From contig CM119374.1 of NCBI GenBank assembly GCA_051294905.1, positions 8,432,001 to 8,496,000 on the forward strand: 64,000 nt of DNA. The letters are read 5' to 3'. This DNA is from Botryllus schlosseri (lineage: Eukaryota). The notes under the pieces are model-generated. The model was given only the letters and a program-made list of their open reading frames with translations. It had not been told where the DNA came from and did no database searches. The translations under genes were made by a program, and so were the position numbers. Shown piece after piece: positions 26,069-33,734 of the stretch (position 1 is its first letter; the number at the start of each line of letters is the position of its first letter).

Positions 26069-27372
26069 CAAGTAGGGATGATGTGAACGTGAGGTTCACG
26101 TTCGCGTTCTGTGTGTGAACCTCGGAAAATTTGAGGTTCGCGTTCACAACAGAACCTTGGTAGGTTCTGCACTGTGAACCTTTTTCATATATTGCAATTT
26201 TCACTTCATTATAACATCTTTGGTTCAAATTTATTGACTTTCAACTGCGGGCCACTTGCTATGCATGGAGCTGGCAGCATAAACATTCAACACTAAACGA
26301 GCATGCCCTTGACAATCTCAAAAAATATTGTTACAAAAGTTTGCTCGAAATATCCAGCTTTCCGTTTGTGCATATTTAGTGTCTCTGTGCTGTGAGCTTG
26401 ACCCGCAATCACATGACATCAAGAGTGAAATACACTGTATTTTGTCAGCGAATGATCCTAATTCAACCAATCAATGAGATTGATTTCGTCTTCTGATGTA
26501 AAAATCTAGCAGGCGTACGGGGTCAATCTTGACTAAATATGTATACTGTATCATAAAAACCAGATCCGTGCGACTGAGATGTTGGCTATACTGCTGTATA
26601 ACTTGTTAATGGGGTAATATCGGTAGCAAGTATAGAAACCCATTTTACACTCTGCTCAATATCCGTGTGGCAATACTCAGACGCCGAATATACATTGTCC
26701 GATCAGGTCGAAATTTATGGCAAAGCGACGCAAGATACCGATTTTATGGGATTATTATATCATTTGATTGCCTCAGTTGATACATTTGGCGACGTTTAAA
26801 ACGTCAATATGTATACTTAAGTACTGAGCTATTATGAGGCCCCGAGTCGTCGCTCTATGCAGTACCGGTACTTATGCATTGCTCTAAAGCTCGGTTTTTA
26901 ATTTGTTTTACCTGTAGAATAGATCTCGGTAATAAGAAAAGAAGTCCTGTAATATTGAGATGATTTATGTTGTCATGTTGTAGAATAAGGTGTGTCAATT
27001 ATAGTCAAATAGGTTAGATAAAGTCTATGAAATAAGTTATGCACCAGGCTTCTATAATTGCCGTTTTAGCGAGTGAAGCCATGTGATTTGACAGCGACAT
27101 TGTTATGGAGAGTATATTGTAGAGGCCTTTGCTCAGATAGGAAGTTTATTCACTCAGTCGTACTCAACAATCCAGCAGCGACGAGACCAAACACGAAAAA
27201 GACACACCAATAAAAACTTTTTTCCCCACCACCGCAAATGGTGGGTTTTGTTCTACATATATGTTCTGCATGTGTCGTAAGGTGACCGGAGTCGCGATTA
27301 CATTTATTTCTATATTAAAAAAAAAAAAAAAAAAAAAAATTTTGTGGTAAACTAACAATTATAACAATTTTG

Positions 27373-27394
27373 TGGAGTATTTGGTTGTATTAAG
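27373..27394 (+). other. Spliced-leader sequence at the 5' end of the Tx1 element
   Basis: TGGAGTATTTGGTTGTATTAAG followed by GT matches 22 of the 24 nt of the stolidobranch SL as I recall it. The motif recurs at 32899 and 32955. Confidence 0.7.
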
Positions 27395-28007
27395 GTTCGC
27401 GTAAGTATATAACGGCTATTTACAGGAGCAAGGAACGAACCGGAGCCGCTGTGGCGATAGTTTATACTTACCGTAAACGTTAGTTAATTTTGCAGTACCT
27501 AGGCTAGAATTTTCACTTAGGCTATTTTTCTCCTTCATATTTTCTCCTTTTCATCGACGGATTTCTACTTCTACTTCGGGTCTCCTTCAGACTCAAACCT
27601 CCTCCCTCCTTGGGCCTGACTCGTCTTCGTGAGTCAGGTCTAAAGGAGTCTGTTCCTACCTCCACTAGAGTTTGACTCGTCTTCGTGAGTCAACTCTAGT
27701 CGGAGTCTTTTCTCTTCAAGTCTTGACTCTCTCTCTCGAGTCAAGACTTGTCGAGTCTTTTCTTCTCTCTCGCGCCTCTCCCTTGGGCGACGAGAGACTG
27801 TCTAGCCTTAATTAACAACACGCTACGACACTGTCTAGACAGTGATCGTACGATCTTCCTGCTGTACTGAAACTGCAGTGTCGCCTTTAGCAAAGCGCGC
27901 AGAAAACGCCTCCAAAAACGCTCTATTAAGCGACAGTACAGCTTCGAATTAAAAAGAACGCAGTCTGTAGGCTAGCCCTCAAGCAACAGCAACTTGGCAA
28001 TACACAG

Positions 28008-32740: not shown

Positions 32741-32898
32741 TAGCGAAGTGAAAAAAAAGGGCCAAAAAATGGGGGGAAAATGAAGATCAAAAACTCGGAA
32801 AAGACGTGCCACAGAAGAACCAACCTTCTCCTGTGAATGGAAATATCAGGAGGACACAAGACCCACACCCAATGTCAACATAGAGTATCTGAGTTGAG

Positions 32899-32923
32899 AT
32901 TGGAGTATTTGGTTGTAATGAGG
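32899..32923 (+). other. SL-like motif inside the Tx1 3' UTR
   Basis: ATTGGAGTATTTGGTTGTA (19 nt identical to the SL 5' part) followed by ATGAGG instead of TTAAGG. Confidence 0.7.
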
Positions 32924-32924
32924 C

Positions 32925-32955
32925 ACTACGCTTGATCTTAGCCATAAAGGCCGAG
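32925..32955 (-). ncRNA. U2: Antisense fragment of U2 snRNA (about nt 8-37)
   Basis: The reverse complement CTCGGCCTTTATGGCTAAGATCAAGCGTAGT differs from canonical U2 CTCGGCCTTTTGGCTAAGATCAAGTGTAGT by one insertion and one substitution. Confidence 0.88.
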
Positions 32956-33404
32956 GAGTATTTGGTTGTATTAAGGTAAGCATCGGCCTGGCTGATGCGG
33001 AACCCTTGTGGTACAACCGATACTTCCAATCACTTGTACACCTAGGAGAAGTATGGCCGTCAGGCCTTCATGCTCCGCACCGGGATCTGTGTCAGCTTGA
33101 CTGGCCAGTATCCCAGTCACAAGTATGGTGGCGGCGGGACAAGCCTCCGCAGACGCCCCCAGCCAAAGCCTGCTTGTGACAACTGTTTGCACCAACAAGT
33201 GACGAAACTTATTGGAGAAAAAAGCAAACAGGAAGCAACCTTTTGGGAGCTCTTGGGTCCTTTCGACCCAAGAGTGACCTATTAAGGCGCTTGTGGCAAT
33301 AGTCCGGTGGTGTAGTGCCACATGGGCTGCCGCAAGCGTAACGGGGTGGAGGTTTACTGCGGTTCCTCCAGGTTACCCCTAAAAAAAAAAAAAAAAAAAA
33401 AAAA
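32930..33404 (+). mobile_element. 475-bp non-autonomous poly(A) retroelement (SINE-like) with a U2-antisense/SL head
   Basis: Perfect 17-bp TSD TTGTAATGAGGCACTAC (32913-32929, 33405-33421). (A)24 tail. 3' hairpin GTAAC..TGGAGG/CCTCCA..GTTAC. SL GGAGTATTTGGTTGTATTAAG followed by GTAAG at 32955-32980. Confidence 0.88.
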
Positions 33405-33670
33405 TTGTAATGAGGCACTACTGCCCGAAAAGGCGGAAACACAAAAATAAATAAGAGAAAAATAAAGAAGAACCTGTCACACTTGCCTAAGCACTGTTCA
33501 AACCCCTCAGTTAGAAAGGAAAAGGAAAAAAAAATAAAAAATAAAAAAGAAGAACCTCAAAACCCCCAGACCGGAGCAGGCACCTATACCAGATGTAGAG
33601 AGGGCCTGCGATGGTCTGGGTATCCGGAGAGCCGCAAAAAAAAAAAAAAAAAAATATTTATTTCTAGATT

Positions 33671-33691
33671 GTACTCGCTTCGGCGGTACAC

Positions 33692-33727
<36 letters not shown>

Positions 33728-33734
33728 GGCCCCT
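33671..33734 (+). ncRNA. U6: U6 snRNA 5' portion (nt 1-64), interrupted
   Basis: GTACTCGCTTCGGCGGTACACATACTAAAATTGGAACGATACAGAGAAGATTAGCATGGCCCCT includes the ACAGAGA box and compensatory 5' stem changes. I found no U6 3' half in the window. Confidence 0.95.

What the first reader, a model, noticed from the sequence alone, without database searches (positions are those of the whole stretch)
32955..33030. Built-in anti-SL sequence 36 nt downstream of the SL head
Seen: TACAACCGATACTTCCAAT (33012-33030) is nearly the reverse complement of ATTGGAGTATTTGGTTGTA. It includes the AAT that would pair with the first three SL bases, which this copy lacks. So the complete RNA probably began with the full SL and folds back on it. 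Inference: this is the native SL RNA fold, a way to mask the donor from trans-splicing, or (speculatively) an RNA segment that can pair with the SL DNA target.
Basis: partly seen in the sequence, partly recalled or inferred. Interest (0 to 1): 0.7.

Follow-up and report, generated by a model that had tools for sequence, protein, structure and literature searches.

The report
Spliced-leader RNA hairpin inside a retrocopy
The "anti-leader" segment is real: it is the returning strand of one long hairpin that folds a sea-squirt spliced-leader exon and its splice donor back on themselves, the fold usual for spliced-leader RNAs, preserved here in a dead poly(A)-tailed retrocopy nested in a LINE.

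Summary
33012-33030, and really 33011-33031, pairs with the spliced leader (SL) copy at 32955-32975. It also pairs with the three or four leader bases that this copy lacks. The hairpin 32955-33035 has 29 pairs. It folds at -34.1 kcal/mol (z -4.75, 0 of 200 shuffles) and is 10 kcal/mol better on the + strand than on the - strand.

The leader is the published stolidobranch ascidian SL. The stretch is not an SL gene. It heads a 475-base retrocopy (32930-33404) with a 24-A tail and 17-bp target duplications. An antisense U2 piece precedes the head. The retrocopy sits in an SL-like site of a Tx1-type LINE's 3' UTR.

Contigs from three organisms carry the same head. Neither arm shows a listed variant. 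In two organisms the apical helix is rebuilt with pair-preserving changes.

Best reading (0.55): the head copies an unspliced SL RNA, and the anti-SL is its stem-loop I.

Not settled:
- No genuine SL gene of this species could be fetched.
- No Sm motif follows the hairpin.
- A genuine SL gene of another tunicate has no such complement.

An element-specific hairpin therefore stays open (0.25). A role in pairing with target DNA is unsupported.

The scan had already noted SL-headed retroelements elsewhere in this genome.

The parts
32898..32922 (+). Leader-like copy (GATTGGAGTATTTGGTTGTAATGAG) in the 3' UTR of the host Tx1-type LINE. It is the target into which the retrocopy inserted.
   Evidence: The left target duplication starts inside it.
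32913..32929 (+). Left target-site duplication, TTGTAATGAGGCACTAC.
   Evidence: Identical 17-mer at 33405-33421.
32930..32954 (-). Antisense piece of U2 snRNA (about nt 8-33) at the 5' junction of the retrocopy.
   Evidence: Rfam U2 match on the minus strand, 23.5 bits, E 0.012, below the gathering score. Reverse complement read.
32955..32975 (+). Spliced-leader exon, bases 4-24 of the 24-nt leader (ATT missing). It forms the 5' arm of the hairpin.
   Evidence: Identical to the published stolidobranch leader. cDNA 5' ends carry it directly after the template-switch oligo.
32976..32980 (+). Splice-donor consensus GTAAG directly after the leader.
   Evidence: The same SL+GTAAG occurs in genuine SL genes L002 and L004.
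32980..32998 (+). Apical helix of the hairpin (GCATCGGC / GCTGATGC, 3-nt loop).
   Evidence: In organisms B and C it is replaced by a longer-looped helix with pair-preserving changes.
33004..33008 (+). Segment that pairs with the donor region (AAG|G), flanked by internal loops.
   Evidence: The T33007C variant is common and shortens this helix.
33011..33031 (+). Anti-leader, the 3' arm of the hairpin. It ends opposite leader base 1, and opposite the 5' G.
   Evidence: No listed variant in three organisms.
33045..33076 (+). Predicted second hairpin (GGAG..GGCC-GTCA-GGCC..CTCC).
   Evidence: 136-nt fold, z -2.5. A loop variant is seen in contigs.
33032..33380 (+). Rest of the retrocopy: body and tail. 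The module 33101-33185 is far more abundant in contigs than its neighbours.
   Evidence: depth table. No Rfam or tRNA match. No other copy in the window.
33381..33404 (+). Poly(A) tail, 24 A.
33405..33421 (+). Right target-site duplication.

Best explanation
32955-33031 is the 5' head of a retroposed RNA. It consists of the host's spliced-leader exon (first 3 bases lost at the 5' junction), its GTAAG donor and about 55 nt of intron-like sequence.

In the RNA these form one long imperfect hairpin. The whole leader pairs with 33011-33031, the donor pairs weakly with 33004-33008 between internal loops, and a GC helix caps the stem.

This is the stem-loop I type of fold that SL RNAs have, with leader and donor inside the first hairpin. 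Most likely the head is a sense copy of an unspliced SL RNA. It would have been joined to a retroposon body by the LINE reverse transcriptase, as in snRNA-headed SINEs and chimeric retrocopies. The anti-leader was carried along passively.

At this locus it does nothing. The copy has no promoter of its own, carries a poly(A) tail and target duplications, and lies in a LINE 3' UTR.

Shown: the pairing, its significance, the strand bias, the retrocopy anatomy and the conservation in other copies.
Inferred: that genuine SL genes of this species carry the same intron.
For: - The leader is identical to the published stolidobranch SL. It is the 5' end of capped cDNAs in this organism.
- GTAAG follows directly, as in the genuine SL genes L002 and L004. 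Those two sit in a tandem unit with U2 snRNA.
- The hairpin energy is -34.1 kcal/mol, z -4.75. The minus strand gives only -24.0, so the G.U pairs fit a + strand RNA.
- The donor lies in the first hairpin next to internal loops, as PMC12582326 describes for SL RNAs.
- In contigs of three organisms no variant is listed in either arm, while flanking positions vary (33000, 33007, 33036, 33037, 33043, 33048, 33049).
- Organisms B and C keep leader, helix and anti-leader with a rebuilt apical helix. One pair changes G-C to C-G and two pairs change on one side.
- The head is 2-5 times more abundant than the segment after about 33066 in all three organisms. This is the opposite of the 5'-truncation gradient expected of a retroposon, so head-only copies exist.
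- snRNA heads added to Tx1-mobilised retroposons are documented (SINEU, PMC4494074).
- The host LINE's own leader head has no fold-back (z -0.5), so the segment belongs to the SL-RNA-like head and not to leader-headed elements in general.
Against: - No genuine SL gene of this species was obtained, so the intron was never compared with the real one.
- No canonical or relaxed Sm motif occurs in 32976-33200.
- The genuine SL gene of another tunicate with the same leader (L002) has an unrelated intron. Its leader-to-intron duplex (-9.0 kcal/mol) is weaker than the shuffle mean of -12.3.
- Few RNA reads continue from the leader into this intron, about 2-7 per bin. By contrast, 408 capped reads share only the first 12 intron bases and then differ. 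Those may be an ordinary trans-spliced mRNA that resembles the 12 bases by chance.
- The two arms are co-extensive, and the apex is palindromic in one contig variant. A reverse-transcription artefact would also give that.
- Because both arms are invariant, there is no covariation in the leader stem itself.
- The variant table was cut (23 rows not shown).
Confidence: 0.55

Rival explanations
1. The hairpin is specific to the retroposon family. The genuine SL gene supplies only leader + GTAAGCATCGGC(C), either through co-transcription from an SL gene into which the element inserted or as the upstream target.

The returning arm began as an antisense reverse-transcript of SL RNA bases 1-36. It was made at a 5' junction when the cut target strand primed on SL RNA, as the antisense U2 piece at 32930-32954 of this same copy seems to have arisen.

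The arm was then kept because it sequesters the leader and donor. That would stop the spliceosome from consuming the element RNA as a leader donor.
For: - The right arm covers exactly leader base 1 (plus C opposite the 5' G) to intron base 12, no more and no less.
- An organism A contig variant reads GCATCGGCCGAT, which would make the apex a perfect palindrome if GC follows (table 5c).
- An antisense snRNA piece sits at this copy's own 5' junction.
- No Sm motif lies in the head.
- A genuine SL gene elsewhere lacks an anti-leader.
- Other sequences share leader + 9-13 intron bases and then diverge: 408 and 12 RNA reads, and an organism B contig with a GC hairpin plus a T9 run. One of them has an Sm-like AUUUUCUCGG.
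Against: - The donor-complement section is far from a reverse complement (13 nt against 9, mostly different), whereas the leader part is nearly perfect. Simple decay of a perfect inverted copy does not predict that pattern.
- The diverging RNA classes may be chance look-alikes. Roughly 0.5-1.6 such mRNAs are expected among about 15,000 trans-spliced genes (my estimate).
- The forms in organism A and organism B differ from each other, so at most one can be the genuine gene.
- Sense addition of snRNA heads is the documented route.
Confidence: 0.25
2. The anti-leader is a guide that pairs with the top strand of SL-gene DNA and helps the element find or join its target.
For: - The retrocopy did land in a leader-like site, with the first nick inside the leader copy at 32912|32913.
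- A contig shows a tail-poly(A) joined directly to TAAGCATCGG, that is, an insertion at an SL donor (table 5c).
- Earlier notes of this scan report donor-site targeting.
Against: - The segment lies at the RNA 5' end, far from where target-primed reverse transcription starts.
- It is already held in a cis duplex of -22 kcal/mol.
- The host LINE, which also carries a leader head, has no such segment.
- Homology for 5' joining is supplied by the leader itself, not by its complement.
- Nothing tested here speaks for it.
Confidence: 0.05
3. The complementarity is chance, or a recent DNA-level inverted duplication with no life as RNA.
For: One other window tile reaches the same duplex energy by chance.
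Against: - Position-specific probability is about 0.002, and the hairpin z-score is -4.75.
- The + strand folds 10 kcal/mol better than the - strand.
- The same imperfect arms occur in three organisms, with a restructured but still paired apex.
Confidence: 0.03

Closest known systems
Stem-loop I of spliced-leader RNAs (nematode SL1, trypanosomatid and flatworm SL RNAs; features summarised in PMC12582326 and PMC7986045)
   Same: Leader exon, GT donor directly after it, donor inside the first hairpin beside an internal loop, and leader paired with downstream intron.
   Different: - The stem here is unusually long. It covers the whole leader from base 1, about 29-33 pairs.
- No Sm-like motif follows.
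- The locus is a retrocopy, not a gene.
- The stolidobranch SL RNA gene is not described in any paper I could search.
SINEU: retroposons with U1/U2 snRNA-derived heads, mobilised by Tx1 LINEs (Kojima 2015, PMC4494074)
   Same: - Short poly(A) retroposon with a 5' head taken from a Pol II small nuclear RNA.
- Tx1-type LINEs in the neighbourhood.
- Extra snRNA pieces added at 5' ends.
- No internal promoter, so transcription from flanking or target promoters is the likely route.
   Different: - The head is an SL RNA (leader + donor + intron), not U1 or U2.
- The host is a tunicate.
- The extra U2 piece here is antisense.
- No partner LINE with the same tail was found in this window.
snRNA/LINE chimeric retrocopies made by template switching (U6/L1 type; cited in PMC4494074)
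   Same: Small nuclear RNA sequence fused 5' to another retrotranscribed RNA, with poly(A) and target duplications.
   Different: The same composite structure recurs, in overlapping contigs, in three organisms. It is therefore a propagating family rather than a one-off chimera.
Genuine tunicate SL RNA gene in an SL-U2 tandem unit (metagenome contigs L002 and L004)
   Same: Identical 24-nt leader and GTAAG donor, with a GC hairpin a few bases after the donor.
   Different: The intron is otherwise unrelated, and its pairing with the leader is no better than for shuffled sequence.

Membership tests
Spliced-leader RNA (functional gene) | Exon identical to the leader found on the species' mRNAs | tested here: met
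   32955-32975 equals bases 4-24 of the published stolidobranch leader. It also equals the 5' ends of cDNAs of this organism.
Spliced-leader RNA (functional gene) | Canonical GT donor immediately after the leader | tested here: met
   GTAAG at 32976-32980.
Spliced-leader RNA (functional gene) | Predicted first hairpin that contains the donor, beside an internal loop or mismatch | tested here: met
   Folds (z -4.75). The criterion is taken from PMC12582326.
Spliced-leader RNA (functional gene) | Sm or Sm-like site 20-60 nt after the donor, flanked by hairpins | tested here: not met
   No RAU(3-6)GR and no relaxed AU(3+)N(0-4)GG in 32976-33200; only AGCTTGA at 33094. The leader itself holds AUUUGG, so an exonic site cannot be excluded.
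Spliced-leader RNA (functional gene) | Own upstream promoter, and a locus not embedded in mobile elements | tested here: not met
   The copy lacks leader bases 1-3 and is preceded by an antisense U2 piece. It ends in A24, has 17-bp target duplications and lies in a LINE 3' UTR.
Spliced-leader RNA (functional gene) | Abundant small capped RNA with this intron | tested here: inconclusive
   Only about 2-7 reads per bin over 32999-33066 in one cDNA library that is not made for small RNAs.
snRNA-headed retroposon (SINEU-like) | 5' head derived from a small nuclear RNA, with poly(A) tail and target duplications | tested here: met
snRNA-headed retroposon (SINEU-like) | Many copies that share the same composite structure | tested here: met
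   859 contigs of organism A were laid, spread from 99% to under 90% identity. Overlapping contigs cover 32988-33193 and 33242-33370 in organism B and all of 32988-33370 in organism C. The linker 33203-33236 is rare, so full-structure copies are few.
snRNA-headed retroposon (SINEU-like) | 3' tail shared with a partner LINE | tested here: not met
   No similarity of 33250-33380 to any LINE in the window. The rest of the genome could not be searched.

The most novel reading that the evidence does not exclude
The hairpin is not part of the working SL RNA. It is a device of a retroposon family that lives in SL genes. It would have been made by antisense copying of SL RNA at an insertion junction. 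A looser version is that it tethers the RNA to SL DNA.
Probability: 0.2. Interest if true: 0.65.

Novelty: new member of a known kind. Interest (0 to 1): 0.3.

Why it matters
If the head is a faithful copy, it gives a first view of the stolidobranch SL RNA beyond its leader. That view is a very long stem-loop I that buries the whole leader and the donor, with an apical helix that varies by pair-preserving changes. Probing and Sm pull-downs could test this.

It also shows that unspliced SL RNA enters the LINE retrotransposition pathway in a chordate. This adds SL RNA to the short list of Pol II small RNAs that head retroposons.

On its own, the pairing is what a specialist would expect of an SL RNA, so the surprise is modest. 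The interest would rise only if the hairpin proved to be an invention of the element.

Tried and rejected
- Rfam, gathering and E<=10: no SL RNA family matches. The only hits are U6 at 33671-33734 and a weak antisense U2.
- Other copies in the window: none beyond the three leader hits.
- Literature search for the leader, the intron and stolidobranch SL RNA genes: only the leader itself is published in the searchable library. The Ciona paper PMC312621 is not held.
- Collection scans:
  - The metagenome scan gave a genuine SL-U2 unit of another tunicate and two irrelevant hits.
  - The viral scans found nothing.
  - The first bacterial-genome scan found nothing. The second gave only a chance Flavobacterium match.
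- Reaching SL genes through LINE flanks:
  - The ORF1 exact look-up found nothing.
  - The closest ORF2 relatives (57-58% identity) sit on 5.5-kb contigs that end at the poly(A) and carry no leader or flank.
- A spurious 116-aa ORF across the head, used as bait for other copies: no hits.
- The sequences that follow leader + 9-12 intron bases in the two RNA read classes: absent from the window.
- The shared 8-mer AATCACTT between this head and L002: rejected as chance (BLAST E 2.6).
- Alternative pairing of the anti-leader with 33029-33046: the common T33037C variant weakens it, so I did not pursue it.

Full report
**What is there**

The window comes from a stolidobranch ascidian. The 24/25-nt sequence (G)ATTGGAGTATTTGGTTGTATTAAG is the leader published for Botryllus, Halocynthia, Styela and other stolidobranchs (PMC3795323, Table 1 and supplement). 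In an RNA run of this organism it follows the template-switch oligo directly at cDNA 5' ends.

The leader core occurs three times in the window:
- at 27374, heading a Tx1-type LINE;
- at 32902, a leader-like copy in that LINE's 3' UTR;
- at 32955, the copy in this finding.

**Anatomy around the finding**

The LINE runs from 27374 to a poly(A) at 33636-33654. Its target duplications, ATTTATTTCTA(T/G)ATT, lie at 27302-27316 and 33656-33670, directly in front of a U6 gene.

A 475-base retrocopy (32930-33404) is nested in the LINE's 3' UTR. It ends in 24 A. It is flanked by a perfect 17-bp duplication, TTGTAATGAGGCACTAC, at 32913-32929 and 33405-33421. That duplication starts inside the leader-like copy 32898-32922.

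From the 5' end the retrocopy holds:
- an antisense U2 snRNA piece at 32930-32954 (Rfam U2, minus strand, E 0.012, below the gathering score);
- leader bases 4-24 (32955-32975);
- GTAAG and intron-like sequence;
- a body with no Rfam or tRNA match.

The stretch is therefore a retrotranscribed RNA, not an SL gene.

**The observation**

The minimum-energy fold of 32955-33035 is a single long hairpin of 29 pairs, 24 Watson-Crick and 5 G.U:
- leader 32955-32971 with 33011-33026;
- the donor region 32972-32976 with 33004-33008, between internal loops;
- an apical helix, 32980-32987 with 32991-32998, with a 3-nt loop.

Adding the missing ATT extends the stem to 33030. C33031 lies opposite the extra 5' G of the published leader.

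The statistics rule out chance:
- The hairpin energy is -34.1 kcal/mol against -19.0 +/- 3.2 for shuffles (z -4.75, 0 of 200).
- The leader-to-downstream duplex of -22.3 kcal/mol is reached by 3 of 2000 shuffles.
- Apart from the reverse complements of the leader copies, only this tile and one other of 882 window tiles reach that energy.
- The reverse-complement strand folds 10 kcal/mol worse (-24.0). That is what G.U pairs selected in a + strand RNA would give.
- The LINE's own leader head (27374-27480) shows no fold-back (z -0.5).

**Other copies**

No second copy exists in the window. I therefore laid contigs of three organisms and raw RNA reads on 32880-33370.

- In organism A, 859 contigs match, spread from over 99% to under 90% identity. 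Overlapping contigs also cover 32988-33193 and 33242-33370 in organism B and all of 32988-33370 in organism C. The composite is a family, not a one-off.
- Among the listed variants none falls in 32955-32988 apart from a 1-base insertion after 32972. None falls in 33008-33035. The flanks do vary: 33000, 33007, 33036, 33037, 33043, 33048 and 33049. The table was cut, with 23 rows not shown.
- In organisms B and C the contigs read leader + GTAAGCATCG + CCTTACTGGACGCTGGGCGGTGCGAAACCC and then rejoin the anti-leader.
  - Folded, this gives a 9-bp apical helix with a longer loop.
  - Against the window's helix, one pair is G-C to C-G and two pairs change on one side.
  - That is modest but real evidence for selection on the structure.
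- The leader stem itself cannot show covariation, because both arms are frozen.
- The head is 2-5 times more abundant than 33067-33100 in all three organisms. This is the opposite of a 5'-truncation gradient, so head-only copies must exist.

**Comparison with a genuine SL gene**

A metagenome scan for leader+GT returned two contigs, L002 and L004. Each carries the full leader, GTAAG and, on the same strand, a complete U2 snRNA gene of 164.9 bits. The two contigs are 98% identical over the 412 bases compared. The gene spacings on them add up to a tandem unit of about 1.33 kb. This is a genuine SL gene of another tunicate.

Its intron is unrelated to the window's beyond GTAAG. Its best leader-to-intron duplex (-9.0 kcal/mol) is weaker than the shuffle mean of -12.3. 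A strong anti-leader is therefore not a general requirement of tunicate SL RNAs with this leader.

**What remains open**

I could not obtain a genuine SL gene of this species. Three things speak against equating the head with the working SL RNA:
- No Sm-like motif occurs in 32976-33200, although the leader itself holds AUUUGG.
- The two arms are exactly co-extensive, from leader base 1 to intron base 12. One contig variant reads GCATCGGCCGAT, which would make the apex a perfect palindrome if GC follows.
- 408 capped RNA reads share leader + GTAAGCATCGGC and then continue ATTTTCTCGGGC.... Twelve other reads diverge after GTAAGCATC. An organism B contig diverges after GTAAGCATCGGCC into a GC hairpin and a T9 run.

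These divergent forms could be any of three things:
- the true SL RNA;
- elements inserted 9-13 bases into the intron and co-transcribed from the SL promoter;
- for the RNA reads, ordinary trans-spliced mRNAs that resemble the short intron stretch by chance. I estimate 0.5-1.6 such cases among about 15,000 genes.

A contig that joins element tail + A7 directly to TAAGCATCGG shows that insertions do occur at SL donors whose intron is of the window type (table 5c). That target could be a gene or another copy's head.

**Explanations**

- Best (0.55): the head is a sense copy of unspliced SL RNA, and the anti-leader is its stem-loop I. PMC12582326 describes this fold for SL RNAs. The head would have been joined to a retroposon body in the way Tx1-mobilised SINEU elements acquired U1 and U2 heads (PMC4494074).
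- Rival (0.25): the returning arm began as an antisense reverse-transcript of SL RNA at an insertion junction. It would parallel the antisense U2 piece on this very copy, and it was kept by the family, perhaps to shield the donor.
- Target-DNA guide (0.05): no support.
- Chance (0.03): excluded in practice.

**Verdict**

The kind of structure is known, and this is a new lineage and a new carrier for it. The scan had already recorded leader-headed LINEs, LTR elements and a small partner element on other DNA of this genome. This report adds the hairpin's statistics, its strand bias, its conservation, and a negative comparison with a genuine tunicate SL gene.

Noticed in passing
window 32898-32929 and 33405-33421: The retrocopy inserted into the leader-like copy of the LINE 3' UTR. 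The poly(A) abuts TTGTAATG, so the first nick fell between leader-like bases GG and TT (32912|32913). The second nick fell 17 bp downstream. Leader-like sequence inside a LINE thus acts as a target for a leader-headed element.
   Followed up: partly
window 32925-32962 (minus strand): An antisense U2 snRNA piece (about nt 8-33) sits at the 5' junction. GTAGT of U2 overlaps the end of the target duplication, and GAG overlaps the leader start. This fits priming of the cut target strand on U2 RNA, followed by a jump to the cDNA.
   Followed up: partly
L002:129-815 and L004:1-1250 (minus strands): Estuarine metagenome contigs hold a tunicate tandem unit of about 1.33 kb. It carries a spliced-leader RNA gene and a complete U2 snRNA gene on the same strand. 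This SL-U2 linkage is not described in the papers I could search.
   Followed up: partly
window 33101-33185: This module of the retrocopy body is 4-9 times more abundant in organism A contigs than the segments on either side. It is also enriched in organism C. It is probably a core shared with other repeat families.
   Followed up: no
window 32955-32987 (RNA run X24): 408 capped cDNA reads read leader + GTAAGCATCGGC and then ATTTTCTCGGGCTCTTTTACAG..., which holds an Sm-like AUUUUCUCGG. They could be the true SL RNA, an element co-transcribed from an SL gene, or a look-alike mRNA.
   Followed up: partly
window 33656-33734: The host LINE's right target duplication ends at the first base of a U6 gene. 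The U6 match stops at model position 62 of 105 (33734), where unrelated sequence begins.
   Followed up: no
window 33004-33046: The anti-leader can alternatively pair with 29-46 nt further on (arms 33004-33021 and 33029-33046, 72% complementary). This hints at an open/closed switch. The common T33037C variant weakens the pairing.
   Followed up: no
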